Below are positions 11,725 to 62,526 of a stretch of 64,000 nt of DNA, in pieces. The notes below the pieces were generated by a model, which ran no database searches, had not been told where the DNA came from, and saw only the letters and a list, made by a program, of their open reading frames with translations. Position numbers and translations under genes: made by a program. Position 1 is the stretch's first letter, and every line of letters starts with the position of its first letter. Location: positions 1-64,000 of IMG/VR virus record IMGVR_UViG_3300032268_000986, one strand, 5' to 3'.

Positions 11725-11725
11725 G

Positions 11726-12688: not shown

Positions 12689-12708
12689 ATATTCTCCTTT
12701 AAAGTTGT

Positions 12709-48513: not shown

Positions 48514-49165
48514 ACTGTTGTGCTAGATACTGATGGGTTTTAATACCATAATGAAATCCATCACGTGCCCGATCCTGGATTGTGCAAGGTAACAGTAGAT
48601 TCTGCATAACTGGATATTCAACCTTACCTGGGTGCCAGTTGGGTATAAAGCTGTGTACTATTTTGCACGACTGTTTAGAGATTGATTCAAAATTCTGCTG
48701 CCAACTGGCATAGTTTTCTTGATCACTGTGTGTGGCTTCGCATAGTGTGCGTTCGTCATCGTGCCATGATGTATCTGCATGTTCTCGACGATGACTAAAC
48801 GTATAATGTATTACTATAGCCCATGGGGTAACCAGTTCAAGCACATCTGCTACTCGTCTGGCAATCCAATTGTTACTAGCACCGTTTAGACTGATGTTAA
48901 ATACCTTGCGGTTTAACTGTTGTTGCATTATATCACTAAACCGTTCTGACGCATTTACTCCCAGGCCTAGAGTAAAACTATCTCCAAATACAACAACAGA
49001 CTCTGAATCCAGTTCTCCTAACTCGTGTGTTCTAAATCCCAATGAGTTAAACTTATACTGAACCGTGCCGTATTGATCAAATCGTTTGCCAGCATACCGG
49101 GCACTGTCGAGTCCCAGTTCAGAGCACACTAGATTTGAATACCGAGGAATTATAATATTGTGCAT
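48491..49165 (-). CDS. SGNH/GDSL-fold protein (esterase or O-acyltransferase-like)
   Basis: NSLGFR, FGDSFTLG, NISLNGASN, RDGFHYG; probable start MHNII at 49165. Confidence 0.75.
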   Translation of the reverse strand: MHNIIIPRYSNLVCSELGLDSARYAGKRFDQYGTVQYKFNSLGFRTHELGELDSESVVVFGDSFTLGLGVNASERFSDIMQQQLNRKVFNISLNGASNNWIARRVADVLELVTPWAIVIHYTFSHRREHADTSWHDDERTLCEATHSDQENYASWQQNFESISKQSCKIVHSFIPNWHPGKVEYPVMQNLLLPCTIQDRARDGFHYGIKTHQYLAQQFTSLLAV

Positions 49166-49188
49166 AGAGTATCTATAAATATTTGCCA

Positions 49189-50274
49189 ATGAACGTCCTT
49201 ATACTTACTCCTGACCGTGTGGGTAGTACATTATTGCAGCGACTCATCACTGTATACGCTAATATAAACGAAAACCAAAGTCCTTTAACGGTTAACCTAC
49301 ACGAACTAACCAACGGGTTAGTAGAGTACCCCAACAAATGCTACAACCAGACCATGCTGGGCAAAAAGCCTGATGCCTGGGGATATCATCAAAGTTTAAG
49401 TACAGTTACGCAGATGTTGTCATCTGCCAAGCACGATGTAGTAAGCAGACTTGCACACTATCACATAAAGAATAGAAAAGATAGTTTAAGTGATCAGTTG
49501 AGCTTTTATCAGTGGCTCAACGAAAACTTTTATATCATTGCTGCTCGTCGAGAAAACTTGTTTGAACATGCCATGAGTTGGTGTATAGCAGCAGAAAGCA
49601 AAAAGCTCAATGTATACAGCTTTGAAGAAAAGTATAGCACCTTTGCAGAATTACAACAACACGGTCTTGACATACAACCTGATGTAATACACAAGTATCT
49701 CAATACCTATCAAGATTACATAACATGGGTAGAGTCGCATTTTACTGTAAATGCTTATTTTGAATACGAAAGAGACTTGCCCAATATTGAAAACTTTATC
49801 ACAGGACTCAGTTGCTTTAAAAAGTTCAAGAACCCACTCAAGTGGCAGGATCGTTTTGATATCAGCTGGACAGATTGGAACCGCATGCACTACCTGTTGA
49901 GTCTTGTGAGCTTCGACTACCAGTTCAGTGCCGAGGAAGACCAGTTCATGACAACCAACATTGATTTATACAGTGCTGCTAGAATACACATACAGGATCT
50001 CCAGGATCAGGGCATATTGGTTTCAGGTATCCCTATCAAATTGCACACACTCAAAGAAAAGGCCAGCCTAATTCACAACATTGATCAGTGTTTGTTGCAT
50101 TACAACAAATGGGTGAATACTATTCAACCACATTGTGGCTTGACGTATACTCCGCAACACCTGGAGCAAGTTGCATTATTAGAACACCATGCCTGGCGTG
50201 GTAATTCTGAAACTTTGCTCACATCAACTATTCCCGAAACTAAATTACTATCTTCAGACTTGAAGTTTTGTTAA
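49189..50274 (+). CDS. Sulfotransferase-like P-loop protein
   Basis: ILTPDRVGSTLL (5'-PSB-like), LHEL, RRENLFEHAMSW (3'-PB-like), FEYE; TATAAATA 7 nt before the ATG at 49189. Confidence 0.65.
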   Translation: MNVLILTPDRVGSTLLQRLITVYANINENQSPLTVNLHELTNGLVEYPNKCYNQTMLGKKPDAWGYHQSLSTVTQMLSSAKHDVVSRLAHYHIKNRKDSLSDQLSFYQWLNENFYIIAARRENLFEHAMSWCIAAESKKLNVYSFEEKYSTFAELQQHGLDIQPDVIHKYLNTYQDYITWVESHFTVNAYFEYERDLPNIENFITGLSCFKKFKNPLKWQDRFDISWTDWNRMHYLLSLVSFDYQFSAEEDQFMTTNIDLYSAARIHIQDLQDQGILVSGIPIKLHTLKEKASLIHNIDQCLLHYNKWVNTIQPHCGLTYTPQHLEQVALLEHHAWRGNSETLLTSTIPETKLLSSDLKFC

Positions 50275-50293: not shown

Positions 50294-52222
50294 ATGATTA
50301 TTGCCTTTTATCCGGGCAGCGGCGGTAACCGCTACTACCAAATGCTCACAGGTACAACTGAATTTGATTCCGGTGTTACCTATGACCATTTATTAAAAAC
50401 ATCACAGCGTTTTCCTTATCGTTATCCCGACAAGAACAGTGTTCTGCCTGATCAACAGTTGATACTAACACACTGCATGAATGTACCGCTGCTCAAGCAG
50501 TTATGGCCAGGTCACGAAGTTCATGTTATTCTAGCAAACCGCACAGCAAGTATACGCAGAGAATGGGTGTTAGAAGGAAAACACAGAGAACACAACATGC
50601 CCGACCTTTTGGAAAACGCACTGGCTACCATAGGGCATCACGACAGATACTACCAAGAATACCCTGTAGATACCAACGGTGCAGACATTGTCGTGGATAT
50701 AGACACAGATCCCGGGACATTTGCCACAATGATGCAGGCTGAACTTGCCGCTTGCACAAGTGAAATATTTGATCAAGCAGCAGGTGAATACCGCCCCGGG
50801 GACCTACGCGATATACCTGGCGATCAAATGGTAGAAGGATTCAAAAGTAAGTTTTTAGACGACGCTGAAAAGATGCGTATGCGTTTGGATCAAGTTAGTC
50901 CCAGCATGTGTTTGGCCAAATGGAAACAAGTTAGCTTACACTTGCAAACAGGCATGAATAATAGCTGCTATCATCCTCCCTTACATGCAATTCCTATAGA
51001 TGCTATACAACGCAACCCTGGGTCACTGCATAACACACCCTACAAAAAAGAACAGCGCAAGATGATGCTCAACGGCGAAAAGCCCGCAGAATGCTCTTAC
51101 TGCTGGAACATGGAAGCTGAAGGCAAACTCAGTGATCGCCACTATAGATCAGCAGAGTCCTGGGCAGCACAAGATTTTGGTAAAATTATTAGTTCAGAGT
51201 ACTCTAATGACATTATTCCATCCTATGTAGAAGTTAACTTTAACAATGCTTGCAACCTCAAGTGCAGTTATTGCAGTCCTCAGTTCTCCAGCAGCTGGGC
51301 TGATGAAATCAGCCGCCATGGTGGGTATCCTACTTCAACTGTTCATAATTCCCCTGAGCATTTTTCCGGATCACGAAGGGTCATACCTGCCCGTGAACAC
51401 AATCCCTATGTTGAAGCGTTTTGGTCTTGGTGGCCAACACTATACCCCGAGCTCAAGCACTTTAGAATGACAGGTGGTGAGCCTTTGCTGGACAAAAACA
51501 CATACCGAGTTTTTGATTACGTACTAGAGCATCCCAAGCCAGACTTGCACTTGAATGTCACATCAAACTTTTCAGTAGACGAAAAGTCATGGCAGAAATA
51601 TCTAGGCTATGTGAAACGACTGTGTCAAGAAGGCAACCTAGAACACTTCATGCAGTATGTGAGCCTAGACGGCTGGGGCACTCAAGCAGAATACATGCGT
51701 CATGGCATGGACTTTGATCTAGTATGGGACAGAGTAAATCAATTTCTCACTGAAGTTCCCAGCTACAACAGCTTGACATTCATTGTCACAATGAACAACC
51801 TCAGTGTAACGTCACTGGAAAACTTATTTGCAGGCATCCTAGGACTTCGAAAAATACACAGTACCACATACCAACGTGTATGGTTTGATACTCCTGTGCT
51901 GCGTGAACCTGCTTGGCAAAGTCTGCAAATCTTGCCTGAACCCTATGCTGACCGCCTGGAACACTTGTGGGCCTGGATGATACGCCAGATAGAAACTCCT
52001 GAAGATCCATTTCATGGCTTCAAGGACTATGAACTGGCACGATTAGATCGTGACATTGCTTGGATGCGAGCTGGACAAAAACAAGACCATGCACAGGCCC
52101 GAGCCGACTTCTATCGTTTCTTCAGCGAACATGATCGTCGCCGCGGTACAGATTTTTTAAAAACATTTCCCGAAATGAGTGCTTGGTGGAACGAGTGTGC
52201 GTATCATGCTAGGAACACATAA
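50294..52222 (+). CDS. Radical SAM protein (N-terminal twitch-like domain) fused to a P-loop/sulfotransferase-like domain
   Basis: FYPGSGGN at the N-terminus; CLAKW..SCYHP..CSYCW; CNLKCSYC; TGGEP. Confidence 0.85.
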   Translation: MIIAFYPGSGGNRYYQMLTGTTEFDSGVTYDHLLKTSQRFPYRYPDKNSVLPDQQLILTHCMNVPLLKQLWPGHEVHVILANRTASIRREWVLEGKHREHNMPDLLENALATIGHHDRYYQEYPVDTNGADIVVDIDTDPGTFATMMQAELAACTSEIFDQAAGEYRPGDLRDIPGDQMVEGFKSKFLDDAEKMRMRLDQVSPSMCLAKWKQVSLHLQTGMNNSCYHPPLHAIPIDAIQRNPGSLHNTPYKKEQRKMMLNGEKPAECSYCWNMEAEGKLSDRHYRSAESWAAQDFGKIISSEYSNDIIPSYVEVNFNNACNLKCSYCSPQFSSSWADEISRHGGYPTSTVHNSPEHFSGSRRVIPAREHNPYVEAFWSWWPTLYPELKHFRMTGGEPLLDKNTYRVFDYVLEHPKPDLHLNVTSNFSVDEKSWQKYLGYVKRLCQEGNLEHFMQYVSLDGWGTQAEYMRHGMDFDLVWDRVNQFLTEVPSYNSLTFIVTMNNLSVTSLENLFAGILGLRKIHSTTYQRVWFDTPVLREPAWQSLQILPEPYADRLEHLWAWMIRQIETPEDPFHGFKDYELARLDRDIAWMRAGQKQDHAQARADFYRFFSEHDRRRGTDFLKTFPEMSAWWNECAYHARNT

Positions 52223-53312
52223 GCTCATAGTTGATGAATGGGCCGAAGTCTGGGACCTGCTGAAATCCTATGCCGATGATTCATTTTGGCAGTGGCCTGA
52301 CACATTTGATCCTGACGCCACGTACATTGTGGGTCGTGTGGTGCTGAAAGAAAACTGGCAGAAGATCACAGACCTGGCCACTCGGTATCCAGGAAGAATA
52401 ATCTTTAGTAATCCTGCCGAGGGGTCTGAAACTGTGCTACTACAGTTGAAAAGACTGCGCATTGCTGATCATGTGCAGGACCGGCGTATGGGCCTGTTGA
52501 CTTCTGGTGATCTAGAGCCTGGAATTGACTACTGCCGAACAGACTGTTACTTCTCTAACATAGTGGAATACACAGAAAACAAACAGGCACAGTTACAAGC
52601 CGCCCTGGATCACAAACAACACCGTCCTTATGAATTTTTGTTCTTGAATGGCCGACTGCGCCCGCATCGCAAATATCTAATAGATCGATTGCGTGAAACC
52701 GGCATGTTGGACTGCGCACTGTGGACCAACTTGGGCGCACATGTTGAACTGGGTTTTACCAGCTGTCTTGACGTGGCACAAACTGAATACATACGCTTGT
52801 TGCCCCCGGAATACGAAATAGATCGTGCTGTGCCCAACATGGCTTCGGCTGCCGAACATGCATTTTGCAAGCATCATTTGTTTGGCAACACCTGGGGCGA
52901 TGCCATTGTGAATCCGCGGTGTTATACTGACTCTTGGTACAGTTTGGTAACAGAAACCATTTTTGATTATGCTCACACCTTTCGCACAGAAAAGATCTGG
53001 AAACCCATATTAATGGCACACCCATTTGTTGTGGCTGCCAATTCTGGCTACTTGCGAGATTTAAGGGCTGCAGGATTTCGCACGTTTGGTCATTTAATAG
53101 ATGAAGGTTACGACAAAATTGACAATCCGCACTACAGAATTGAACGTGTAATAGACACCGTGCGCGACATTGGTCAGCAGGGTGCTGCTGAATTCTGGCA
53201 GGCCAGCCGCGATGTCTGTAAATACAATCAGCAACATCTTGTGGAGTACAACCGTGAACAACGGTCTCAACTTCCTATTGACCTAGAAAAATATCTAAAT
53301 GAACGATCTTGA
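52206..53312 (+). CDS. Glycosyltransferase-like protein (GT-B-type C-terminus)
   Basis: FLFLNGRLRPHR, SLVTET, TEKIWKPI..HPF, GFRTF..IDEGYD; probable start at 52206. Confidence 0.55.
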   Translation: MLGTHKLIVDEWAEVWDLLKSYADDSFWQWPDTFDPDATYIVGRVVLKENWQKITDLATRYPGRIIFSNPAEGSETVLLQLKRLRIADHVQDRRMGLLTSGDLEPGIDYCRTDCYFSNIVEYTENKQAQLQAALDHKQHRPYEFLFLNGRLRPHRKYLIDRLRETGMLDCALWTNLGAHVELGFTSCLDVAQTEYIRLLPPEYEIDRAVPNMASAAEHAFCKHHLFGNTWGDAIVNPRCYTDSWYSLVTETIFDYAHTFRTEKIWKPILMAHPFVVAANSGYLRDLRAAGFRTFGHLIDEGYDKIDNPHYRIERVIDTVRDIGQQGAAEFWQASRDVCKYNQQHLVEYNREQRSQLPIDLEKYLNERS

Positions 53313-54624
53313 ATTTCGACGAGAAGTATTAGACAATATATCCGACAGTTTTTGTGCAGCCAAGTGGTACAACGCCACCATTTGGCTGGGTTCCGGCATG
53401 ACCACATCATGTCATCACCCACCGGCCCATTTGGTGGACAAAGATAAAGTCCAGGCCAACCCTAGGCTGTTGCACAATACTGATCAGAAAAAAGCAGATC
53501 GTGCCCTGATGTTAAAGGGCGAACGTCCCAGTGGTTGTGAATACTGCTGGAAAATTGAAGACATTGGTCGCGACAACATTTCGGACCGTGTGTACAAATC
53601 ACGAATTTATCCCATAAAGGCCCTACATGAAGCAGCAAACACTCCCACAGATCAAGACGTCAATCTTCGCACACTTGAAATTGCATTCGACCGCACTTGC
53701 CAATTTGCTTGTAGCTATTGTAACCCTGCTTTTTCTAGCACATGGGTTAACGACATCAAGCGCAACGGGCCTTACCAGTCCCTGGTGTCTGATGGGCGCA
53801 ACCACTTTACTCATGCTCACGACAGTGCTCAACTATACCGGTTTGGCGAAACTAATCCGTATGTTGAAGCCTTCTTTGAGTGGTGGGAGACAGACCTCTA
53901 CCAAACCCTGCAAGAACTGAGAATCACCGGAGGTGAGCCCCTGATGTCAGCGCACACCTGGCGACTGATTGACTGGTTCCGTGACAATCAAGGCCGCAGT
54001 GCAACACGCCTGGCCATTAACTCAAATCTGGGTGCGGATGTGGATGTTGATCGACTGTTGAACAGCACTCAAGGCCTGCCAGTGGAGATCTACACCAGCA
54101 TGGAAGCCACGGGTGTAGCAGCCGAATACATTCGTGATGGCCTGGACTATGCAGCCTGGATCGCCAATGTTGAAAAGCTCTTGGCCGCAGGCGTCACAGT
54201 ACATTGCATGTGTACCATTAATGCCCTGTGCTTGACCACACTGCCTGCACACCTGGATCAACTGGTCACATGGAAAAAACAACACGGACATGATCGTGTG
54301 AACTTTACACTAAACATCCTGCGCTTCCCCAGCTTTCAATCACCCCTGGTGTTGCCCAACACACTGCGCCAGCAGTTCCAGCAGGCGTTGACTCAGTGGC
54401 TAGAGGATCATCAAGGTCACAGCCATTTGCAAGAGCACGAAATCAATCACACACAGCGTCTAATAGACTATCTTGATGTAGTAAAGACTCCGCACAGTGA
54501 TGCGTTTGACCTGCCCCGATTGCTGAATGATTTCCAGAAATTTCATGCACAATATGACCAGCGCAGAAATAAAGATTTTGGAACAGCATTTCCCATGTTA
54601 AAGGAATGGTATGACAGCTTATAA
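53299..54624 (+). CDS. Radical SAM protein with N-terminal twitch-like domain
   Basis: CAAKW..SCHHP..CEYCW; CQFACSYC; TGGEP. Confidence 0.9.
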   Translation: MNDLEFRREVLDNISDSFCAAKWYNATIWLGSGMTTSCHHPPAHLVDKDKVQANPRLLHNTDQKKADRALMLKGERPSGCEYCWKIEDIGRDNISDRVYKSRIYPIKALHEAANTPTDQDVNLRTLEIAFDRTCQFACSYCNPAFSSTWVNDIKRNGPYQSLVSDGRNHFTHAHDSAQLYRFGETNPYVEAFFEWWETDLYQTLQELRITGGEPLMSAHTWRLIDWFRDNQGRSATRLAINSNLGADVDVDRLLNSTQGLPVEIYTSMEATGVAAEYIRDGLDYAAWIANVEKLLAAGVTVHCMCTINALCLTTLPAHLDQLVTWKKQHGHDRVNFTLNILRFPSFQSPLVLPNTLRQQFQQALTQWLEDHQGHSHLQEHEINHTQRLIDYLDVVKTPHSDAFDLPRLLNDFQKFHAQYDQRRNKDFGTAFPMLKEWYDSL

Positions 54625-55873
54625 TTACAACTCCGCAGACCTAGTACGACCTGTGGATCTCACTGCTCGTGAGGAATTCTTGTTGAAAGATTCTAAAACC
54701 TTTTGCATCTATCCTTGGATTCATTTACATGCTTACCCCACTGGCGAAGCATACCCCTGTTGTCATGCCGAAATGAAACCGGGTGTAGTGGGCAACTGTC
54801 GTGAGAATACTCTGGCGGAAATATGGCGTGGTGAGCCCATGCAGAAACTGCGCAATGACATGTTGACTGAAACTCCGCATGCTGCCTGCACACGTTGTTA
54901 TGAACAAGAAGAGTCAGGTTTCTTTTCGGGCCGCCGTAGTGCCAACAAGCATCATGGACACCACATAAAGAAGCTGGAAGAAAACCCATTTGAAATGACA
55001 TACTGGGACATTCGTTTCTCAAACCTTTGCAACTTAAAATGTCGCAGTTGCGGACATATCTTTAGCTCACAGTGGTATCAAGATCAAGCCAAGCTGGCTG
55101 GTGGAGACTGGAAAGAGCGCAACACAGTTCTTAACTATGCCGGCCGCACCGAAACTGACATGTGGTCGCAGTTGGAACCGCACCTGGACTATGTGGAGCA
55201 AATCTATTTTGCCGGTGGCGAACCCCTGCTCATGGAAGAACACTATCGCATCCTGGACGAGCTGGTGAAAAGAAAACGTTTTGATGTTAGATTGATCTAC
55301 AACACCAACTTCACACACACTGATCTCAAGGGCCGTTCAGTGTTTGAATACTGGCGACAATTCAACAGTGTGGCCGTGGGGGCAAGTCTGGACGCCTCGG
55401 GTGCCCGGGGTGAGTACATTCGCAAAGGCACTGACTGGGCTGTGGTAGAGAAAAATCGTCAAGACATGATCAATATCTGCCCTCAAGTGGACTTTTACAT
55501 CTCACCTACTCTGAGCATCATGAATGCACATCACCTGCCTGAGTTCCATCGTGACTGGGTGGAAAAAGGACTGATTCGAGCACAAGATCTAAACGTAAAC
55601 ATCTTGCAAGATCCCCCACACTACCGCATAGACATAGCCCCGGCTGAATACAAATCAGAACTCACCGAGCTGTATCAAGAGCATATCAAGTGGCTGACAG
55701 CACAAGATCCCCTGGGCCGTGCCACACAGGGATTTGAGTCAGCTGTGACCTACATGAATGCCACAGACAACACACATCTAATAGACACATTCTGGCGCAA
55801 GACCCATGAACTAGACAGTATCAGAAATGAAAATTGTCTCACAGTTATTCCTGAATTAAAGGCATTGCTATGA
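54611..55873 (+). CDS. Radical SAM protein with N-terminal twitch-like domain
   Basis: CIYPW..PCC..CTRC; CNLKCRSC; AGGEP; YNTN. Confidence 0.9.
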   Translation: MTAYNYNSADLVRPVDLTAREEFLLKDSKTFCIYPWIHLHAYPTGEAYPCCHAEMKPGVVGNCRENTLAEIWRGEPMQKLRNDMLTETPHAACTRCYEQEESGFFSGRRSANKHHGHHIKKLEENPFEMTYWDIRFSNLCNLKCRSCGHIFSSQWYQDQAKLAGGDWKERNTVLNYAGRTETDMWSQLEPHLDYVEQIYFAGGEPLLMEEHYRILDELVKRKRFDVRLIYNTNFTHTDLKGRSVFEYWRQFNSVAVGASLDASGARGEYIRKGTDWAVVEKNRQDMINICPQVDFYISPTLSIMNAHHLPEFHRDWVEKGLIRAQDLNVNILQDPPHYRIDIAPAEYKSELTELYQEHIKWLTAQDPLGRATQGFESAVTYMNATDNTHLIDTFWRKTHELDSIRNENCLTVIPELKALL

Positions 55874-56454
55874 CAGCCGTTGCGCTAGGATGCAGTCACA
55901 CTGCCGGAGTTGGTGTTGACTCACAGCACTGCTATGTATCAGTGCTGGGCCAGCTGCTGAATACACATATTAAAAATCTAGGAGTACCTGGCGGAAATTG
56001 TTCACATGTACAACATACCCTGGTCGCTGAATTAAAATTATCTCAGCGGCCAGACTTTGTGATTGCACAATGGCCCAATCCTGTTAGACTCACTGTATGG
56101 CATGGCGACCAGGCCAGAAATGAAAATTTAAACCATGCCAGCCCGGCCTTTAAACAACTACTGCGCACCGGCGAACAAAATTTTTATCAACCCTGGATTG
56201 CAGCCATTGTTGTGTGTAATTTGCTGTGCCAACAGGCAGGAGTACCAATAATAAACATCATGATTGAAGATGTTGACTCTCAATATTACACTGTGCTAGC
56301 CCGTGAAAACATTGTGCTGCATGTGGACCGCAAACTGCCTGATCAAACTTGGTTAATGGACTCAGCAGCCAGTGACAATTTGCATCATTCAGCCCGTTGT
56401 CACCAACAATGGGCCAATCGATTACATGGATTATTAAATGAATATACCACATAA
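55870..56454 (+). CDS. SGNH-fold protein
   Basis: GCSHTAG, NLGVPGG, SDNLHH. Confidence 0.7.
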   Translation: MTAVALGCSHTAGVGVDSQHCYVSVLGQLLNTHIKNLGVPGGNCSHVQHTLVAELKLSQRPDFVIAQWPNPVRLTVWHGDQARNENLNHASPAFKQLLRTGEQNFYQPWIAAIVVCNLLCQQAGVPIINIMIEDVDSQYYTVLARENIVLHVDRKLPDQTWLMDSAASDNLHHSARCHQQWANRLHGLLNEYTT

Positions 56455-57655
56455 TAAATTCTGCGTGTTGCCCTGGGTAAGCCTGGAAGCGTCACCCATT
56501 GGCACAGTACGTCCGTGCTGCCTGGCCGATGATGAGCTGGTGGACAACAGCGGCACCAAGTTCTCGTTGTTGACTGCGGATTTTGCGGACATACAAAACA
56601 GTGATTCCATGCGCAGTCTGCGTGAGCAGTTCCTGGCAGGTGAACAACCTCAAACCTGTCGCAAGTGCTGGAACGAAGAACGTGCCGGCCGCACATCAAA
56701 ACGCATGCACACCCTAAATCGTCTCAAGCATGTGATTGGTGATGATCCCTGGACTGCAGATGCCCGACCCCTGATGTTCCTGGATCTCAAACTGGGCAAC
56801 ATCTGCAACTTGAAATGTCGTATCTGCGGCTCATGGTCATCAAGCCAATTTGCCACAGAAGAACTCAATGACATGCATCCCGATGATGACAAGAAAAAAA
56901 CATATCCATATCAGATGCTGCGAGCCGGTGCATGGCCCCGAGAGAATCAGCAGTTTTGGCAACAGATTGATTCAGTACTGAATGACATTCGATATATTGA
57001 ATTCACTGGCGGTGAGCCATTCATGATTCGCGAACACTTTGCCATGCTGCAAGGCATTGTGGACCGTGGCATTGCTCATCAAGTCGAAATTCATTACAAC
57101 ACCAATGGCACTCAGTATCCTGCAGAAGCCATTGAAATCTGGCGCCATTTTAAAACAGTGGAAATTGCATTCAGCATTGATGACCTGGGTGCCAGATTTG
57201 AATACCAACGCACCAATGCTGTGTGGTCAGAAGTGGAACAAAATATTCAACGTTTTCGACTGTTGCGTCGACAGTTGCCCATGATTCAACTACAGTGTTG
57301 CAGCACAGTGAACATTTTCAACATACACTACATAGATCAACTGGCCGCCTGGATTGTGCGCCAAGAATTTGATTTTGTGTACTGGAACATCATGCACGAC
57401 GCCTGGTATTTTTCCATTGGCTGTTTGCCAGCCCCGGCCAAACAAGCCCTGGAGCATCATTTGCGCACAGCCGCTGTGCCTGCGGTGTACCGCGAAGAAT
57501 TTGATCGCATAATTGATTTCATGCAACGTGGAGCCACAACCGATGGATTCATGACTCGAATGAAAATACGTGATCTAGACCGCAAGCGCAATCAAAACAT
57601 GCTGGACACGCAGCCAGAAATGGCAGCACTGCTGGGCTACAACTTCAACCAATGA
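56438..57655 (+). CDS. Radical SAM protein with N-terminal twitch-like domain
   Basis: CVLPW..PCC..CRKCW; CNLKCRIC; TGGEP; YNTNG. Confidence 0.9.
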   Translation: MNIPHNKFCVLPWVSLEASPIGTVRPCCLADDELVDNSGTKFSLLTADFADIQNSDSMRSLREQFLAGEQPQTCRKCWNEERAGRTSKRMHTLNRLKHVIGDDPWTADARPLMFLDLKLGNICNLKCRICGSWSSSQFATEELNDMHPDDDKKKTYPYQMLRAGAWPRENQQFWQQIDSVLNDIRYIEFTGGEPFMIREHFAMLQGIVDRGIAHQVEIHYNTNGTQYPAEAIEIWRHFKTVEIAFSIDDLGARFEYQRTNAVWSEVEQNIQRFRLLRRQLPMIQLQCCSTVNIFNIHYIDQLAAWIVRQEFDFVYWNIMHDAWYFSIGCLPAPAKQALEHHLRTAAVPAVYREEFDRIIDFMQRGATTDGFMTRMKIRDLDRKRNQNMLDTQPEMAALLGYNFNQ

Positions 57656-58641
57656 AAACACTGTTGTACGATAATCATACCAGTTTAGCATTGGACTGCT
57701 GTGCAGACCTGACTCAGCAGTATTTCAAAGTAGAACAGTATGATGCTGGCCGTGTGTATGATCCTGCTGATACCTTGGTAGTGATACCATTCTTTGGCGC
57801 AGGTGACTGGGCGTTTGACCTGCATGCTCAGGGATTTCGTGTGGCAGTAGATAATCTATGGGAACCCACCAGTCGCTATCTTGCCAGTCCAGGGTATGGC
57901 AAACTGGATCCTGATCGCACATTTGAAATTCACAGCGACTTGTGGTTTTGGTATTATGAATCCTGGAGCCTTTCTTATGCTCGAGCTCGCAATCAACATC
58001 TAGAGTACACACCACGCCGAACCTATAAAAAACTGGCGCTCATGCCCATGCGTCTTGAAAGAATGCATCGTGACTGGCTGTTTGACGCCATGACACCCTG
58101 GCTTGATGACTTCTACTACAGCTACCAAGCCAGGGGTATCAGTCTGCCCTGGGACCTGCCCTACGAAGATCCCACTGCACAACGCTACTATGATCCGCGT
58201 TGGTATGACGACACTTGGTTCAGCATAGTGGCCGAAAGCTATGTGGATGAAATGAATATCACAACATGGGGAACCAACCGCACGCCTTATCTAGGACCTT
58301 GGCCATTTATCACAGAAAAAACCTTTAAACCCATTGCGTTTCAACATCCATTTCAGGTTCTGGGTCATTCAGGCACCTTGGCTCGACTGCGTGAACTGGG
58401 GTTTGAAACATTTCCAGAAATGTTTGATGAATCATATGACCAGGCACCTACCGAACAAAAGAAATTGTCTATTTTGAAAAATAATGTCGCCAATTTTGAT
58501 CGCGGTGCCGGTGGTTACAGTCAACTAACACTGGATAAATTAACACACAACCACCAATTGTTTTTTGACTCTAAGAGAGTTGAGCAGGGTTTTTATCAAG
58601 ACATTATTGAACCACTATTGGCCTATGCAGAATCGACCTGA
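57652..58641 (+). CDS. Glycosyltransferase-like protein, paralog of 52206..53312
   Basis: SIVAES, ITEKTFKPI..HPF, GFETF..FDESYD. Confidence 0.55.
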   Translation: MKTLLYDNHTSLALDCCADLTQQYFKVEQYDAGRVYDPADTLVVIPFFGAGDWAFDLHAQGFRVAVDNLWEPTSRYLASPGYGKLDPDRTFEIHSDLWFWYYESWSLSYARARNQHLEYTPRRTYKKLALMPMRLERMHRDWLFDAMTPWLDDFYYSYQARGISLPWDLPYEDPTAQRYYDPRWYDDTWFSIVAESYVDEMNITTWGTNRTPYLGPWPFITEKTFKPIAFQHPFQVLGHSGTLARLRELGFETFPEMFDESYDQAPTEQKKLSILKNNVANFDRGAGGYSQLTLDKLTHNHQLFFDSKRVEQGFYQDIIEPLLAYAEST

Positions 58642-59920
58642 CACCATGTGCATGGCACCCTGGGTGCATACCTATCTTTCACCACAGACCGAACGGCGTT
58701 TGTGTTGTGCCAGCCGTGAGCCTGCACAGAATTTTCGTCAGTACATAGACACTGCTGCTGGCACCGGCCGGTATATTCCCATTACCTTGGATCAACACTG
58801 GAATTCCGACCACATGCAGAGTGTGCGTCGACGCATGATGGCCGGAGAAACTCTGCCTGAATGCGATGTATGCAACAGCAAATTGCTGAATACTTCAGTG
58901 TATCGAGACTATTTTTGGCATCTGTTCCAGCACAAATTACCCGAAGTGTATGACAGCACTGATGCCCAGGGCCGTACCACCATGCAACCAGTGTCATGGG
59001 ATTATCGCTTTAGTAATCTCTGCAATTTCAAATGTAGGACCTGTGGTGACATGCTAAGTAGTTCATGGGAAAGCGAGCAAAAGATCAACAACATGGTCAA
59101 TTGGAGCGACCCAAAAAACAACTGGATGCTGCCCCAGGTTCGACAACAAATCTCACAGTTCCAAGACAGTCAAATTGAACAAGAATTCAGTGACGCAGTG
59201 GAACAACACCGAGTGGAAGAGATTTACTGGGTAGGCGGTGAACCACTCATGTACGAACAGCACTGGCGGTACATGAAAAGAATCATTGAACTAGGAGACG
59301 GAAAAAATGTTTACGCTAGATATAACACAAACCTCAGTCGTGTTCATTATCGCAACACTGATCTTTATAGGGATCTGTTGGTTAACCTACGTGACTGGCA
59401 AATCTGCGCCAGCCTCGACGGAACAGGAGAAATCGGAGAATACATCCGCACAGGTCTGGAATATTCCACCTTTTTAAACAACTTTGAACAGGGTTTGACT
59501 ATACAAACAAATCCGCGTCAGATGCGCCTGGACTTTACACTCACATTGCCGGGCATGTTTGAAGTTGACCGCATGCAACAGCTGGCTCAGCAGTATGGGG
59601 TGGAACTCTTGGCCAAGGTGATATTCTCGTTTACCCCGGACATTGTGATGAGTCCCTTGGCCCTGCCACGTGAATTACTGGATGCCTGGGTAGACGAGCT
59701 GGTGCCCAACTGCACCAGCAATGCCATGCGTGATGTGCTGACACAGTTGAAAACCCGTCCCACGTTTGAACAACAGTGGCCAGACACGTATCGTGTGGCT
59801 CTTGCTCGTGGCCGCGATCGTGTGTTAAAATTAGAATCTATTCGTCCCGGCACTACAACCATGGAATCCATACTTGATGCCAGGCCAGAAATACGGAAAT
59901 GGTGGAATGAAATTGCTTGA
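58625..59920 (+). CDS. Radical SAM protein with N-terminal twitch-like domain
   Basis: CMAPW..LCC..CDVC; CNFKCRTC; VGGEP; probable start MQNRP at 58625. Confidence 0.9.
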   Translation: MQNRPDTMCMAPWVHTYLSPQTERRLCCASREPAQNFRQYIDTAAGTGRYIPITLDQHWNSDHMQSVRRRMMAGETLPECDVCNSKLLNTSVYRDYFWHLFQHKLPEVYDSTDAQGRTTMQPVSWDYRFSNLCNFKCRTCGDMLSSSWESEQKINNMVNWSDPKNNWMLPQVRQQISQFQDSQIEQEFSDAVEQHRVEEIYWVGGEPLMYEQHWRYMKRIIELGDGKNVYARYNTNLSRVHYRNTDLYRDLLVNLRDWQICASLDGTGEIGEYIRTGLEYSTFLNNFEQGLTIQTNPRQMRLDFTLTLPGMFEVDRMQQLAQQYGVELLAKVIFSFTPDIVMSPLALPRELLDAWVDELVPNCTSNAMRDVLTQLKTRPTFEQQWPDTYRVALARGRDRVLKLESIRPGTTTMESILDARPEIRKWWNEIA

Positions 59921-60956
59921 TGAATTCACAATTGAACTACGCAGTCGGCAAGACAACAGTCAGTTAACCCTCTATGTCAATGTAGATGACAACAGCTTGA
60001 GCCGTAAATGGCTCACGGCCTTGAATCACCTGGTGAGCAACAACTACCATTTGGAAAAGAACTATTGTTTTTTTGGATTCCCCGACAGTGATCGCAACAA
60101 AGAATACCTGTGTGAACAGATCAATGCATCAATTGCAGCCATCAATGCCTCGGCACTCACATACAAAATAAATGATCATTTCACTGTGGACAACACAGTG
60201 CAGCCGGACACAGGCAAATTGATTCATGACCGATTGAATCAATTGCACTGTTATTTTGAAGATCTGCAGGGAGTGTCGGGCCGCATGAGTCCCCACTATC
60301 AGTCAGCTGATGATGTCACACGCTGGCACATTCGACAATTAAATTTGCTGTGTCACGAATATGAAAGTCTGATCTTGAGCCAACGCAAGAGTTGGCAAGC
60401 GCCAGAATGGATCAGACCCAGCCAGCTGATGTGCTGGCTCAATGCGCCGAGATTTGAACTGGACTCTGCAGACTACGAACTGTTTGGAGTGGACACCATA
60501 TCTCGGGGCACTGGACAGGTGTTTGTGGGTGTGAACAAAGCAGTGGGCAAGCATCACTGGGAAGTGTTCAATGATGAAGGCAGAGACAGCCGCATAGATG
60601 AACTCACCACGTCCACACTGAAAACTCAAACCGAAGCCGCTGGCGATTTTGACATTGAGTGGGGTCAAGACCCTGCTCCCTATGAATTTCAGCAGACAAA
60701 ACTGGCAGACTTTAGAACATGGCTGCGAGCCAATGGATTTGACCCTGAGGATCCCACACTCACAATTGGCCATCCCAGAGTGGCACAAGTGGATCTCCAG
60801 CGCAGTTTTGGTACCTTGGAATATCGCAAGATCTGGGATCAGTTGGAGCATCACATGGATGTGTATAAAATACGTACCAGTGACGCTCGAGCTACATATG
60901 AGTATCGCTGGAGCGATGCTGATTATGCTGCAAGGCAAATAAAGGAATTGAAATGA
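59907..60956 (+). CDS. Hypothetical protein (His/Glu motifs LNQLHCYFE and LNLLCHEYE; possibly metal-binding)
   Basis: Long ORF overlapping both neighbours; probable start MKLLD at 59907. Confidence 0.65.
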   Translation: MKLLDEFTIELRSRQDNSQLTLYVNVDDNSLSRKWLTALNHLVSNNYHLEKNYCFFGFPDSDRNKEYLCEQINASIAAINASALTYKINDHFTVDNTVQPDTGKLIHDRLNQLHCYFEDLQGVSGRMSPHYQSADDVTRWHIRQLNLLCHEYESLILSQRKSWQAPEWIRPSQLMCWLNAPRFELDSADYELFGVDTISRGTGQVFVGVNKAVGKHHWEVFNDEGRDSRIDELTTSTLKTQTEAAGDFDIEWGQDPAPYEFQQTKLADFRTWLRANGFDPEDPTLTIGHPRVAQVDLQRSFGTLEYRKIWDQLEHHMDVYKIRTSDARATYEYRWSDADYAARQIKELK

Positions 60957-61054
60957 ATTGGATCAAACGAATCTACAACAGAATTGTCATGGAAATACGC
61001 TATCGTAAAAAGCTAAAAGAGCTGCGCAAACGAGATCCCTTTATCTACAAATGA
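60953..61054 (+). CDS. 33-aa basic peptide ending RDPFIYK (not in ORF track)
   Basis: MNWIKRIYNRIVMEIRYRKKLKELRKRDPFIYK; AAGGA RBS; ATGA overlaps at both ends. Confidence 0.75.
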   Translation: MNWIKRIYNRIVMEIRYRKKLKELRKRDPFIYK

Positions 61055-62526
61055 ATATACTGGGAATTAGTGCAGGCTTTCATGATGCAGCCGCTACTGT
61101 GATTTCACCCGACGGTGAGATTTTGTTTGCCGGCCATTCAGAGCGTTACAGCAAAAAGAAAAACGACTCAGATATTTCCGTGGCGTTGCTGAACGAAATA
61201 GACATGAGTCAAATTGACACCATTGCATACTATGAACGTCCCTGGGTCAAACAACTGCGTCAATTGTACGCAGGTCAGGGCATTGAGTGGCACAAACTCA
61301 CCACACGGCAAATACTACAAGCACAGCTGGGCCGCCGCAGAGTTTCTGGACGCACATTAAAGAACTACAATCACCATCAGTGTCATGCTGCTGCGGGATT
61401 TCAGACCAGCCCCCATCAACGGGCCACAGTGGTGGTGATTGATGCCATTGGCGAATTAGATACCATAAGCATCTGGGGCGCACAATATGTCAACGGCCGT
61501 GCTGTGTATAAACAACTGTGGCGACAGCGATATCCACACTCAATTGGCTTGTTTTATTCGGCAGCCACGGCCAGTGTTGGCCTGCGACCCTTGGACGAAG
61601 AATACATCTTGATGGGCATGGCCGCATACGGTGACGCCGCACAAGCCATCGGCATGCATGCTCTGGTAAAAGACACTGACAAAATTGAATTTAGTGAAAA
61701 CCTACATGCTGGAATAGACCCCAAGTACCTGCAGGATCTAGAGGAATTTGACATTGCTGCCGGAGCACAGTCCATGGCAGAGTGTCTGATCTATTCAGTT
61801 GTGCGCAGAGCAAAGGACTTTGGTTGGAGCGACAACTTGGTGTACATGGGCGGTGTTGCTCTCAACTGCTCGGCCAATCGCAATTTGGGGAAATACTTTG
61901 ATAACATTTGGATTATGCCTTGTCCCGGCGATGCTGGTAGTAGCCTGGGTGCGGCAGCACTTGCACATGGCCAACAGATACATTGGACCAATGCCTATCT
62001 GGGCACAGATATCCCTGGTGCTTATCCTGTCAACGACATTGTGGACGGTCTGCTACATGATCAAATTGTGGGTGTGGCCTCGGGTCGTGCCGAGTTTGGA
62101 CCCAGGGCTCTGGGCAACAGAAGTTTGCTCGCAGACCCCAGAGGCAGCGAGATCAAGGGGAAAGTAAATGCAATCAAACGCAGACAACAATTTAGACCAT
62201 TTGCGCCGGTTATTCTGGAAGAGCTGGCTGATCAGTACTTTGATATGCCTAGGGGTTTCGGTCACAGTAGGTATATGCAGTCAGTCGCTCGTTGCCGGCA
62301 TCCTGACCTATTTCCTGCTGTCATTCATCATGACGGTACTAGTCGTGTACAAACTGTACCCCAGGATGGATCGGGAATTAGACAACTTTTGGAAAAGTGG
62401 TATGCCTTGACCGGTTGTCCCATGTTGCTCAACACCAGTTTGAACATACGTGGCGAGCCCATGGTCAATGACCGATCAGACGCTGACAGATTTGAAATGC
62501 TGTACGGTGTGCGAGTTTGCAGTTGA
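61051..62526 (+). CDS. Carbamoyltransferase (NodU/CmcH/TobZ family)
   Basis: ILGISAGFHDAAA, HHQCHAA, IDAIGE, GGVALNC, EFGPRALGNRS, FRPFAP, LLNTSLN. Confidence 0.95.
   Translation: MNILGISAGFHDAAATVISPDGEILFAGHSERYSKKKNDSDISVALLNEIDMSQIDTIAYYERPWVKQLRQLYAGQGIEWHKLTTRQILQAQLGRRRVSGRTLKNYNHHQCHAAAGFQTSPHQRATVVVIDAIGELDTISIWGAQYVNGRAVYKQLWRQRYPHSIGLFYSAATASVGLRPLDEEYILMGMAAYGDAAQAIGMHALVKDTDKIEFSENLHAGIDPKYLQDLEEFDIAAGAQSMAECLIYSVVRRAKDFGWSDNLVYMGGVALNCSANRNLGKYFDNIWIMPCPGDAGSSLGAAALAHGQQIHWTNAYLGTDIPGAYPVNDIVDGLLHDQIVGVASGRAEFGPRALGNRSLLADPRGSEIKGKVNAIKRRQQFRPFAPVILEELADQYFDMPRGFGHSRYMQSVARCRHPDLFPAVIHHDGTSRVQTVPQDGSGIRQLLEKWYALTGCPMLLNTSLNIRGEPMVNDRSDADRFEMLYGVRVCS

What the first reader, a model, noticed from the sequence alone, without database searches (positions are those of the whole stretch)
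50890..59920. Five paralogous radical SAM enzymes with the auxiliary Fe-S domain placed before the SAM core
Each of the five has C-x2-(P/K)W...(P/L)CC or SC(Y/H)H...CxxC upstream of the CxxxCxxC motif. This is the reverse of the usual C-terminal SPASM/twitch order, which the radical SAM at 5770-6783 does show. Two subtypes are visible: SC(Y/H)HP (50294, 53299) and (P/L)CC (54611, 56438, 58625). They alternate with GT-like and SGNH genes, suggesting step-specific enzyme pairs. O2-sensitive Fe-S chemistry at this copy number is a large investment for a phage.
Basis: partly seen in the sequence, partly recalled or inferred. Interest (0 to 1): 0.6.

Follow-up and report, generated by a model that had tools for sequence, protein, structure and literature searches.

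The report
Phage radical SAM enzymes, twitch-first
A 343-kb freshwater jumbo phage carries five (ten genome-wide) radical SAM enzymes of a catalogued but uncharacterised family whose extra iron-sulfur domain precedes the catalytic core, in a conserved block next to sugar-handling genes and a Ser/Thr-rich fibre-like protein.

Summary
Five + strand genes (50294-59920) each have a C-x12/13-G-x4-C ... CxxC cysteine domain ahead of the CxxxCxxC radical SAM core.

The architecture is not new. All five score 279-391 bits (cut-off 170) on NCBIfam NF033640, "N_Twi_rSAM, twitch domain-containing radical SAM protein". No member has a known function.

The window is the first 64 kb of a 342,865-bp T4-related jumbo myovirus. 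It holds ten members of this family and 14 radical SAM genes in all.

The five are not recent duplicates. They are old subfamilies, kept in the order R1-R5 in most related viral contigs. Their nearest cellular relatives form similar arrays in Bdellovibrionia.

The alternation with GT-like and SGNH genes is mostly accessory. One SGNH gene is a presence/absence variant between strains.

The conserved block runs: tail-fibre-like gene, a 32% Ser/Thr protein, two GT8-like genes, a further conserved gene, R1-R5, an unknown gene, a 33-aa micro-ORF and a carbamoyltransferase. An amidinotransferase, an NDP-sugar epimerase/dehydratase and a DegT aminotransferase lie nearby.

My best reading is inferred, not shown: these are two-cluster enzymes that tailor sugars of a glycan or glycoconjugate, probably on a virion fibre protein.

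The parts
42588..44375 (+). Tail-fibre-like protein (TF), member of an 11-copy paralogue family. It forms the upstream edge of the conserved block.
   Evidence: All-vs-all BLAST family of 11. PHROG virion structural protein hit. Conserved position in IMG/VR loci.
44389..45354 (+). u44: Ser/Thr-rich fibre-like protein, the candidate glycan acceptor (inferred).
   Evidence: It has the highest S+T fraction of the proteome, 32.1% against a mean of 13.4%. Its 56 orthologues have a median of 29.8%. Conserved position.
45655..46518 (+). u45: GT8-like (GT-A fold) glycosyltransferase candidate.
   Evidence: A profile of u45/u46 orthologues hits glycogenin-1 at E 1.2e-4. The top 19 rows are all glycogenin, and the alignment runs through the DxD motif. 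No Pfam hit.
46505..47284 (+). u46: second GT8-like glycosyltransferase candidate, a paralogue of u45.
   Evidence: PHROG phrog_1903, function unknown.
47551..48513 (+). A47: conserved partner gene directly upstream of R1. It has an invariant D-G-D motif, and a GT-A-like fold is inferred from that motif only. A homologous domain ends the 1456-aa protein at 66449-70819.
   Evidence: Conserved in phage relatives, in RsoM2USA next to the R1 orthologue, and beside rSAM arrays in two cellular loci. No Pfam or PDB hit.
48491..49189 (-). GDSL/SGNH-like hydrolase, accessory.
   Evidence: Pfam Lipase_GDSL E 1e-4, below the cut-off. Present in few related loci.
49183..50274 (+). Unknown 363-aa protein, accessory.
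   Evidence: No family hit. Present in few related loci.
50294..52222 (+). R1: N_Twi radical SAM (residues 202-631, SC(Y)H subtype) fused to a 200-aa N-terminal domain that resembles viral sulfotransferase-like proteins (a lead only).
   Evidence: NF033640 329 bits. Atlas feature scores 0.92-0.93 to sulfotransferase-named clusters. dN/dS 0.09.
52179..53312 (+). GT-B, fucosyltransferase-like (GT10-like) candidate; one of nine paralogues in the genome.
   Evidence: Paralogue family. Conserved E...TEK...DESYD motifs. Atlas lead to PF00852 at 0.79. A model of the paralogue has FUT11 and FUT9 as best matches. Pfam GT10 does not hit. It lies between R1 and R2 in 37 of 56 loci.
53299..54624 (+). R2: N_Twi radical SAM, SC(H)H subtype.
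   Evidence: NF033640 292 bits. 50.6% identical orthologue in Ralstonia phage RsoM2USA. dN/dS 0.17.
54611..55873 (+). R3: N_Twi radical SAM, PCC subtype, the member closest to the family consensus.
   Evidence: NF033640 391 bits and Pfam SPASM at residues 32-97. AF2 model pLDDT 83.8. More than 7,700 metagenomic homologues. dN/dS 0.055.
55870..56454 (+). SGNH-like hydrolase, a strain-variable insertion.
   Evidence: Lipase_GDSL_2 E 0.014 over the whole profile. Contigs from three other lake samples join 55864/55867 directly to 56436. Absent from L001. Present in 3 of 56 loci.
56438..57655 (+). R4: N_Twi radical SAM, PCC subtype.
   Evidence: NF033640 336 bits, Pfam SPASM at residues 9-78 and Radical_SAM 36 bits. 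dN/dS 0.10.
57652..58641 (+). Second GT10-like candidate, accessory at this position.
   Evidence: AF2 pLDDT 51.8. VIA-align best matches FUT11 Z 8.7 and FUT9 Z 8.4. Lies between R4 and R5 in 11 of 56 loci.
58625..59920 (+). R5: N_Twi radical SAM, LCC subtype.
   Evidence: NF033640 279.5 bits. It forms its own clade with a Pseudobdellovibrio member.
59907..60956 (+). U59: conserved protein of unknown function that follows R5. The likely start is the ATG at 59907; the ORF is open from 59874.
   Evidence: Orthologues at 36-67% identity. Conserved position. No Pfam or PDB hit.
60953..61054 (+). 33-aa micro-ORF ending K-R-DPFIYK, with overlapping stop/start codons (ATGA) at both ends.
   Evidence: All 120 IMG/VR loci returned encode such a peptide, and 100 of them have a carbamoyltransferase in the flank.
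61051..62526 (+). Carbamoyltransferase of the NodU/CmcH/TobZ type.
   Evidence: Pfam Carbam_trans_N 3.6e-35 and Carbam_trans_C 1.6e-47.
62528..63142 (+). Possible SGNH-type hydrolase, judged from its motif only (begins MSRIYITGDSF). The ORF is open from 62450.
   Evidence: Sequence motif. No family hit.
63176..64000 (-). Amidinotransferase. The gene runs on to 64219, beyond the window. It is one of four paralogues.
   Evidence: A profile of the paralogues hits StrB1 inosamine-phosphate amidinotransferase at 8e-53 and AGAT at 4e-44, with the catalytic GG-x-HC-x-T-x-D kept.

Best explanation
The five genes encode two-cluster radical SAM enzymes of the N_Twi_rSAM family (NF033640). An N-terminal twitch domain (half a SPASM domain) uses four conserved cysteines (C32, C50/51, C93, C96 in R3 numbering) to bind one auxiliary [4Fe-4S] cluster. 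The following partial TIM barrel binds the SAM-cleaving cluster through CxxxCxxC and binds SAM through GGE. Electrons and SAM come from the host.

The five are distinct, ancient subfamilies (R1-R5) that travel as an ordered block. Each most likely performs a different radical step (epimerisation, dehydrogenation, dehydration or C-C chemistry, as in twitch enzymes that act on sugars) on carbohydrate units of one glycan or glycoconjugate.

Glycosyltransferase-like genes (GT8-like, GT10-like), a carbamoyltransferase, amidinotransferases and NDP-amino-sugar enzymes nearby would build and decorate the same product. The most likely target is the Ser/Thr-rich fibre-like protein encoded at the head of the block, that is, virion glycosylation.

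Shown: family membership, cysteine conservation, purifying selection, synteny and neighbour identities. Inferred: cluster binding, a carbohydrate substrate, the reactions and the virion target.
For: Family and domain order:
- Full-length NF033640 hits at 279-391 bits.
- The N-terminal region aligns to C-terminal SPASM/twitch regions of StsB, NirJ2 and MftC and to the BtrN twitch domain at E 1.5e-4.
- Pfam SPASM hits the N-termini of two of the five.

Cluster site:
- The four N-terminal cysteine positions are kept in 176-199 of 202 members. The SAM-cluster cysteines are kept in 201.
- The AF2 model has pLDDT 83.8 and pTM 0.81. It shows a beta-hairpin between Cys1 and Cys2, and the CxxC at the start of a helix, as in twitch domains.
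- The core matches BlsE (Z 12.8), anSME (12.4) and DesII (11.9).

Function retained: dN/dS is 0.055-0.17 for R1-R4. For R5 the synonymous sites are saturated, so no ratio could be computed.

Distinct roles:
- The paralogues are not monophyletic.
- All five subfamilies occur in 52 of 56 related loci, and in the order R1-R5 in 46.

Carbohydrate context:
- u45/u46 resemble glycogenin GT8.
- The GT10-like family has fold and motif leads.
- Carbamoyltransferase and amidinotransferase.
- NDP-sugar epimerase/dehydratase at 70805-71767 and DegT aminotransferase at 71764-72837.
- An AsnB-like gene beside another GT10-like gene.
- Cellular single-copy members sit next to GT2 or GT90 genes in Paenibacillus, Cellvibrionaceae and Nereida.

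Virion link:
- The block always follows a tail-fibre-like gene and u44, the most Ser/Thr-rich protein of the proteome.
- Aeromonas phage 332-Vera also has eight rSAM genes inside its structural cluster (PMC12390700).
Against: - No member of NF033640 has a known reaction, and no substrate was tested.
- I could not read model coordinates, so the inter-cluster geometry is unverified.
- GT10 membership failed the Pfam test, and the GT-like model is of low confidence (pLDDT 51.8).
- The GT8-like call rests on E 1e-4 over 115 residues.
- The other five genomic paralogues lie beside ClpP, a RecA/UvsX-like gene and the terminase, not beside sugar genes.
- In Bdellovibrionia arrays most neighbours are unannotated.
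- One Paenibacillus member sits among ACP/KS/SDR genes, which points to a lipid or polyketide-like moiety.
- SPASM/twitch enzymes are at least as often peptide maturases.
- No RNA data were found, so late co-expression with structural genes is assumed from position and strand only.
Confidence: 0.5

Rival explanations
1. The rSAMs are protein or peptide maturases. They would install cross-links, epimerise residues or oxidise side chains on a phage structural protein (for example u44 or the fibres) or on a small precursor peptide, as most SPASM/twitch enzymes do. The sugar genes would act separately or afterwards, as in mycofactocin.
For: - Weak NCBIfam similarities to sactipeptide, ranthipeptide and cyclophane maturases.
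- The best PDB sequence and fold matches include anSME, SkfB, SuiB and CteB.
- The block is tied to structural genes.
- A conserved aromatic and basic 33-aa micro-ORF lies in the cluster.
Against: - No RRE/PqqD-like recognition domain was detected in any of the five.
- The micro-ORF tracks the carbamoyltransferase (100 of 120 loci), not the rSAMs (28 of 120). No copy was found in Bdellovibrionia arrays.
- The similarities to maturases lie in the generic core and the SPASM motif.
Confidence: 0.2
2. The same chemistry, aimed at the host. The block would remodel a host surface polysaccharide (O-antigen, capsule or S-layer glycan) during infection, for superinfection exclusion or to prevent progeny from sticking to debris.
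For: - Cellular members lie near GT2/GT90 genes and PEP-mutase-type envelope glycan genes.
- Bdellovibrionia, whose arrays are the nearest cellular relatives, carry them on chromosomal contigs.
Against: - The GT2 Pfam family, the only envelope-type family I searched for in the genome, gave one sub-threshold match.
- The block's fixed position is after fibre genes rather than with early genes.
- Flippase, polymerase and initiating-transferase families were not searched for, so this rival is only weakly tested.
Confidence: 0.15
3. The cluster makes a diffusible aminoglycoside- or aminocyclitol-like small molecule. This would combine amidino, carbamoyl and sulfate decorations, GT steps and BtrN-type radical chemistry. 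The phage or infected cell would use it against competitors.
For: - The amidinotransferase is closest to StrB1 of streptomycin biosynthesis.
- The carbamoyltransferase is of the TobZ/NodU type.
- Twitch enzymes such as BtrN and BlsE act in aminoglycoside and nucleoside antibiotic pathways.
- A cyanophage paper already labelled an amidinotransferase plus rSAM pair as 'antibiotic synthesis genes' (PMC12801897).
Against: - I saw no inositol or 2-deoxy-scyllo-inosose synthase and no exporter, though I did not search for them specifically.
- The amidinotransferase is variably present in the block.
- The tight linkage to fibre genes is not explained.
Confidence: 0.1
4. The enzymes hypermodify phage DNA, with glycosylated or otherwise decorated bases, to evade restriction.
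For: T4-type phages glycosylate hmC. Radical SAM enzymes take part in thymidine and 7-deazaguanine hypermodification in other phages. This rests on established knowledge and on PMC10516641 listed, whose text I did not read.
Against: - The genome has no ThyA-type hydroxymethylase.
- The block sits in the structural module.
- The cellular arrays in Bdellovibrionia lie on large chromosomal contigs beside further rSAM, amidinotransferase and carbamoyltransferase genes, a setting that does not suggest DNA modification.
Confidence: 0.05

Closest known systems
NCBIfam NF033640, N_Twi_rSAM (twitch domain-containing radical SAM protein)
   Same: Full-length matches for all five window genes and five more in the genome, all above the curated cut-off. 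They share the N-terminal twitch cysteine pattern, the CxxxCxxC and the GGE.
   Different: Nothing in architecture differs. What is added here: ten copies in one phage, a conserved five-subfamily block, and one copy (R1) fused to a sulfotransferase-like domain. The family itself has no assigned reaction.
C-terminal twitch enzymes acting on sugars: BtrN (2-deoxy-scyllo-inosamine dehydrogenase) and BlsE (cytosylglucuronate decarboxylase)
   Same: One auxiliary cluster in a half-SPASM domain with C-x(n)-G-x4-C ... CxxC. The N-terminal domain aligns to the BtrN twitch domain (E 1.5e-4). BlsE is the best structural match to the core (Z 12.8). The genetic context is carbohydrate-related.
   Different: The domain order is reversed. 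Sequence identity is only 11-20%. No shared substrate-binding residues were established.
Multi-rSAM modules of Campylobacter phages CP220/CPt10 (Timms et al. 2010, PMC2853527) and Aeromonas phage 332-Vera (PMC12390700)
   Same: These are T4-related or jumbo phages with 8-12 radical SAM genes. CP220/CPt10 have a swappable module of five rSAM genes plus an amidinotransferase. In 332-Vera the rSAM genes lie inside the structural cluster.
   Different: The CP220 rSAMs are not N_Twi: they score 31 bits or less on NF033640 and match the core only. No function is known for those modules either. 332-Vera was not tested here.
Phage and giant-virus virion glycosylation systems (mycobacteriophage capsid and tail glycosylation; Mimivirus fibril glycans). 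From general knowledge, not tested here.
   Same: Virus-encoded glycosyltransferases and NDP-amino-sugar enzymes sit next to structural genes, with Ser/Thr-rich acceptor proteins.
   Different: To my knowledge no radical SAM tailoring has been described in those systems. Glycosylation of this phage's virion is inferred, not shown.

Membership tests
NF033640 N_Twi_rSAM | Whole-protein HMM score at or above the curated cut-off of 170 bits, over the full model length | tested here: met
   Scores of 329.1, 292.4, 391.4, 335.9 and 279.5 bits, covering model positions 1-2 to 384-398 of 398. The genome-wide search found ten places over the cut-off.
NF033640 N_Twi_rSAM | Twitch (half-SPASM) cysteine motif located N-terminal to the radical SAM core | tested here: met
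   C-x12/13-G-x4-C then CxxC lie before CxxxCxxC in all ten paralogues. Pfam SPASM hits at residues 32-97 and 9-78. Alignment to the BtrN twitch domain.
Radical SAM superfamily (PF04055) | CxxxCxxC cluster motif and GGE SAM-binding motif in a partial TIM barrel | tested here: met
   C140/C144/C147 and G202-G203-E204 are invariant. They are kept in 200-202 of 202 members. Core fold matches at Z 10-12.8. Pfam scores are partly below the gathering threshold.
Radical SAM / twitch enzymes | Actual binding of two [4Fe-4S] clusters and reductive SAM cleavage | not testable with these tools
   Needs anaerobic reconstitution, iron and sulfide analysis, EPR or Moessbauer spectroscopy and 5'-deoxyadenosine assays.
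Canonical SPASM domain (PF13186 / TIGR04085, two auxiliary clusters, C-terminal) | Seven-cysteine motif including CX2CX5CX3C and a final Cys, placed after the core | tested here: not met
   Only the first-half cysteines are conserved. There are no conserved cysteines C-terminal to the core in ten paralogues. The domain is N-terminal. So this is twitch-type, not full SPASM.
RiPP maturases with RRE | PqqD-like RiPP recognition element, plus a precursor peptide gene linked to the enzyme | tested here: not met
   No RRE family was detected. The only conserved micro-ORF co-varies with the carbamoyltransferase (100 of 120 loci), not the rSAMs (28 of 120).
GT10 fucosyltransferases (PF00852), for the interleaved GT-like genes | Match to the family HMM | tested here: not met
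   No Pfam hit in protein scans or in the genome scan. The control genomes also gave no match, so that scan is weak.
GT10 fucosyltransferases / GT-B fold, for the interleaved GT-like genes | GT-B C-terminal nucleotide-sugar domain with an E...TEK-type motif | tested here: inconclusive
   Invariant E195 and E222-K223 in nine paralogues. A low-confidence model (pLDDT 51.8) has FUT11 (Z 8.7) and FUT9 (Z 8.4) as best matches, followed by other GT-B enzymes. Atlas lead at 0.79.
Amidinotransferases (StrB1/AGAT), for 63176-64219 and its paralogues | Profile similarity over the full length and the catalytic Cys-His-Asp residues | tested here: met
   StrB1 8e-53, AGAT 4e-44, HsvA and SxtG. H181, D183 and C317 are invariant within GG-x-HC-x-T-x-D.
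GT8 (glycogenin/LgtC type), for u45 and u46 | GT-A N-terminal domain with a DxD motif | tested here: inconclusive
   The profile hits glycogenin at E 1.2e-4 over 115 residues including DxD, and the top 19 rows are all glycogenin. No Pfam hit.

The most novel reading that the evidence does not exclude
An abundant, globally distributed lineage of large T4-related aquatic phages carries a fixed five-enzyme radical SAM 'assembly line' (R1-R5, all N-terminal-twitch type). It performs successive radical tailoring steps on a virion-attached glycan built on a Ser/Thr-rich fibre protein. That would be the first radical SAM glycan-editing pathway in any virus and the first function for the N_Twi_rSAM family. 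The same toolkit (N_Twi arrays, SPASM rSAM, amidinotransferase, carbamoyltransferase) would be shared with the predatory Bdellovibrionia.
Probability: 0.3. Interest if true: 0.8.

Novelty: new member of a known kind. Interest (0 to 1): 0.55.

Why it matters
The N-terminal-twitch radical SAM family is large. It still has no known reaction.

This phage lineage offers an unusually clean handle on it. Five subfamilies sit in a fixed order, under strong purifying selection, next to a candidate acceptor protein and sugar enzymes. A cultured relative, Ralstonia phage RsoM2USA, keeps orthologues of R1, R2, the upstream partner gene and the carbamoyltransferase.

Working out the chemistry would assign function to a whole family. 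It could also explain why several unrelated large phages (CP220/CPt10, 332-Vera, this lineage) invest in 8-14 oxygen-sensitive enzymes.

If the product is a virion glycan, it bears on phage adsorption, on stability, and on how phages are recognised by grazers or immune systems.

Tried and rejected
- Megablast of 50-60 kb against cultured phages found no match.
- tblastn of two paralogues found only 4-9 distant phage records.
- The ten-paralogue alignment was too divergent for the search for related loci. A narrower alignment worked.
- PDB profile searches found nothing for the GT10-like family, A47 or U59.
- Pfam, NCBIfam and PHROGs gave no hits for the interleaved genes.
- The AF2 model of the GT-like protein was poor (pLDDT 51.8), so its fold matches are only a lead.
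- Model coordinates are not exposed. I could not measure Cys-Cys or cluster-cluster distances, or test whether the N-terminal twitch occupies the same position as a C-terminal one.
- The micro-ORF as RiPP precursor for the rSAMs: rejected, because it follows the carbamoyltransferase and not the rSAMs. It is also too short for the word search.
- DNA hypermodification: no ThyA-type enzyme in the genome.
- Phage-encoded support for rSAM chemistry: no flavodoxin and no SAM synthetase.
- Expression: no RNA run holds the region.
- Promoter and terminator scans were at or below shuffle expectation. No tRNAs in the window.
- CP220 rSAMs as the same family: rejected.
- The big representative search and complex prediction were not used. 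No claim here rests on an absence of relatives or on protein binding.

Full report
**What is there**

Between 50294 and 59920 the + strand carries five long ORFs of 642, 441, 420, 405 and 431 aa. Each contains CxxxCxxC and a GGE motif. Upstream of those, each has a cysteine pattern of C-x2-(P/K)W, then SC(Y/H)H or (P/L)CC, then CxxC. The spacing is C-x12/13-G-x4-C followed by CxxC, which is the first half of the SPASM motif.

All five match NCBIfam NF033640 (N_Twi_rSAM, "twitch domain-containing radical SAM protein") over the whole model. Scores are 279-391 bits against a curated cut-off of 170. Pfam places a SPASM domain at residues 32-97 of the third gene and 9-78 of the fourth, ahead of the Radical_SAM domain.

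The weaker NCBIfam rows tell the same story. The N-terminal 40-100 residues of the third protein align to the C-terminal SPASM portions of StsB, NirJ2, MftC and others. A profile of the paralogues aligns its first 85 positions to the C-terminal twitch domain of BtrN at E 1.5e-4.

The auxiliary-cluster domain really does come first. It is also a recognised, curated architecture.

**The cluster site**

Across the ten paralogues of this genome, C32, C50/51, C93, the CxxxCxxC and the GGE are invariant or nearly so.

Across 202 family members from phages and bacteria, conservation is as follows:
- C32: 197 of 202
- C50 and C51: 176 and 184 of 202
- C93: 199 of 202
- C96: 199 of 202
- each SAM-cluster cysteine: 201 of 202

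Four conserved N-terminal positions, and no conserved cysteines after the core, mean one auxiliary cluster. This is twitch, not full SPASM.

An AlphaFold2 model of the third protein is confident (pLDDT 83.8, pTM 0.81). It shows a beta-hairpin between the first two cysteines and the CxxC at the start of a helix. The core resembles BlsE (Z 12.8), anSME (12.4), DesII (11.9), MoaA and viperins. Coordinates are not exposed, so I could not measure the geometry. Cluster binding remains an inference.

**The genome**

The window is the first 64 kb of a 342,865-bp virus record estimated to be 99% complete.
- Its baseplate wedge protein is 34% identical to those of Atu_ph07, GAP32, CBB and other Rak2-like or T4-related jumbo myoviruses.
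- NF033640 matches ten places above the cut-off.
- Pfam Radical_SAM finds 14 radical SAM genes in all.
- There are nine paralogues of the interleaved GT-like gene and four of an amidinotransferase.
- The phage has no flavodoxin and no SAM synthetase, so it must draw on the host for electrons and SAM.

The region occurs in lake and freshwater metagenomes from at least 11 studies. No RNA run holds it.

**Not local duplicates**

A tree of 202 members (FastTree only, so branch support should be read with care) places each window paralogue with its own orthologues in phage-like contigs. Each then has its own Bdellovibrionia sister group.

R1 and R2 (the SC(Y/H)H subtype) are sister clades. R3 falls with single-copy members from Paenibacillus, Nereida, Cellvibrionaceae and others.

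Synonymous sites between this phage and its closest relative are saturated. dN/dS is 0.055-0.17 for R1-R4 and could not be computed for R5.

**Conserved gene order**

For the best 80 (47-87% identity), I labelled genes by their best BLAST hit to this phage's proteome. The recurring order is:

tail-fibre-like gene, u44, u45, u46, A47, R1, R2, R3, R4, R5, U59, carbamoyltransferase.

After that come either an amidinotransferase plus GT-like genes, or a very large protein plus DegT and epimerase genes.

Of the 56 loci that span A47 to U59:
- all five subfamilies are present in 52;
- they stand in the order R1 to R5 in 46;
- R2 and R3 are adjacent in all 56;
- a GT-like gene lies between R1 and R2 in 37;
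- a GT-like or epimerase gene lies between R4 and R5 in 11;
- the SGNH gene occurs in 3;
- 15 have nothing between the rSAMs.

Contigs from three other lake samples join 55864/55867 directly to 56436. This removes exactly the SGNH gene at 55870-56454, so that gene is a strain-level presence/absence variant.

The "alternating enzyme pairs" reading is therefore not supported, apart from a fairly common R1-GT-R2 arrangement.

**What the neighbours are**

| Gene | Identification |
|---|---|
| 61051-62526 | NodU/CmcH/TobZ-type carbamoyltransferase |
| 63176-64219 and three paralogues | Amidinotransferases; profile vs StrB1 8e-53, catalytic residues kept |
| 70805-71767 (just beyond the window) | NDP-sugar epimerase/dehydratase |
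| 71764-72837 (just beyond the window) | DegT-type sugar aminotransferase |
| 130.7-133.6 kb | A second amidinotransferase, epimerase and rSAM trio |
| 113109-114614 | AsnB-like amidotransferase beside another GT-like gene |
| u45, u46 | Profile matches glycogenin (GT8) at E 1.2e-4 through the DxD motif |
| GT-like family | Conserved E...TEK...DESYD motifs; FUT11/FUT9 top a low-confidence fold search; fails Pfam GT10 |
| R1, first 200 residues | Resemble viral sulfotransferase-like proteins in feature space only |
| u44 | Most Ser/Thr-rich protein of the proteome (32.1% vs 13.4%); also true of 56 orthologues |

**Cellular relatives**

The scan of bacterial and archaeal genomes found 213 relatives. 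Many Bdellovibrionia contigs, including megabase-scale ones, carry arrays of up to nine copies within 17 kb. Those arrays often sit with SPASM-type rSAMs, amidinotransferases and carbamoyltransferases homologous to the phage's own.

Single-copy members sit next to GT2 or GT90 genes in three of the cellular contexts examined. One sits among ACP/KS/SDR genes.

Several "MAG" contigs are evidently mis-binned phage relatives, because they also carry the phage's fibre-side genes. These include contigs labelled Haliscomenobacter, Legionellales and Rickettsiales.

**Precedents**

Campylobacter phages CP220 and CPt10 were reported in 2010 to have 11-12 radical SAM genes. That report also described a swappable module of five rSAM genes plus an amidinotransferase (PMC2853527). 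Those rSAMs are not N_Twi: they score 31 bits or less.

Aeromonas phage 332-Vera has eight rSAM genes inside its structural cluster (PMC12390700).

Among cultured phages, Ralstonia phage RsoM2USA has two N_Twi members above the cut-off. Vibrio phage K566 has two above it and three just below.

RsoM2USA keeps an R2 orthologue (50.6% identity) with the micro-ORF and the carbamoyltransferase nearby. It also keeps an R1 orthologue next to an A47 homologue. It is the natural experimental system.

I found no paper that names this family or its N-terminal twitch.

**Mechanism**

Shown:
- family membership;
- conserved cysteines;
- purifying selection;
- ancient subfamilies in a fixed order;
- a sugar-enzyme neighbourhood;
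- linkage to fibre genes.

Inferred:
- each enzyme binds a SAM cluster and one fully ligated auxiliary cluster;
- each performs a distinct radical step on a carbohydrate unit of a common product, by analogy with the twitch enzymes BtrN and BlsE and with the sugar-acting rSAM DesII;
- that product is a glycan on the Ser/Thr-rich fibre-like protein.

Rivals are protein or peptide maturation, host envelope remodelling, an aminoglycoside-like small molecule, and DNA hypermodification. The last is disfavoured by the absence of a ThyA-type hydroxymethylase.

**Verdict**

The headline feature, an auxiliary domain before the core, is a known family trait, so it is not novel in itself.

The interest lies elsewhere. 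An uncharacterised family is deployed as a conserved five-step block, ten copies per genome, in an abundant aquatic jumbo-phage lineage. It has a plausible and testable glycan-tailoring role, and a cultured relative is available to test it in.

Noticed in passing
window 60953-61054 (+): A 33-aa micro-ORF whose start and stop codons overlap the flanking genes (ATGA at both ends). Its C-terminus K-R-DPFIYK is invariant. It is conserved in related phages and is present but unannotated in Ralstonia phage RsoM2USA. All 120 encode such a 30-45 aa peptide, and 100 have a carbamoyltransferase in the flank. It looks like a widespread partner of the phage carbamoyltransferase, of unknown function.
   Followed up: partly
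window 55864-56436: The SGNH-like gene 55870-56454 is a presence/absence polymorphism. Contigs from three other lake samples join the third and fourth rSAM genes directly.
   Followed up: yes
window 27414-41786 (+): A single ORF of 4,790 aa follows the baseplate wedge gene. BLAST links it to a second large protein at 193256-196672.
   Followed up: no
window 8928-12712 (-): A TctC/Bug-family solute-binding protein homologue (Pfam 1.2e-24) lies next to two paralogous AMP-binding (adenylating) enzymes in a phage genome. The Bug family is expanded in Burkholderiales (from memory), which may hint at the host.
   Followed up: no
L055 (Pseudobdellovibrionaceae MAG contig), L042, L084 and other Bdellovibrionia loci: Arrays of up to nine N_Twi radical SAM genes lie within 17 kb on cellular contigs. 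They often sit with amidinotransferase, carbamoyltransferase and SPASM-rSAM homologues of the phage genes.
   Followed up: partly
L012, L013 (contigs of a 'Haliscomenobacter' MAG); L014, L016-L018 (contigs of Legionellales, Betaproteobacteria TMED41, Verrucomicrobia TMED56 and Rickettsiales MAGs): These MAG contigs carry the phage's fibre-side genes and the R1-R5 block at up to 84% identity. They are probably phage contigs binned with bacterial genomes. At best they give a weak lead to the host.
   Followed up: partly
genome 125044-127011 (-), outside the window: A fourteenth radical SAM gene (open frame 669 aa) gives the best Pfam Radical_SAM score in the genome. It does not belong to the N_Twi family or the SPASM paralogue family.
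   Followed up: no
L006 (genome 222000-241999): Two ClpP protease paralogues flank an unknown gene, next to one of the scattered N_Twi rSAMs. A UvdE UV-endonuclease homologue lies between two amidinotransferase paralogues.
   Followed up: no
genome 66449-70819 (+), L002: A 1,456-aa protein whose last ~215 residues are homologous to A47 (47551-48513). In more distant relatives it follows the rSAM block directly, together with DegT and epimerase genes. It has no informative Pfam hit.
   Followed up: partly
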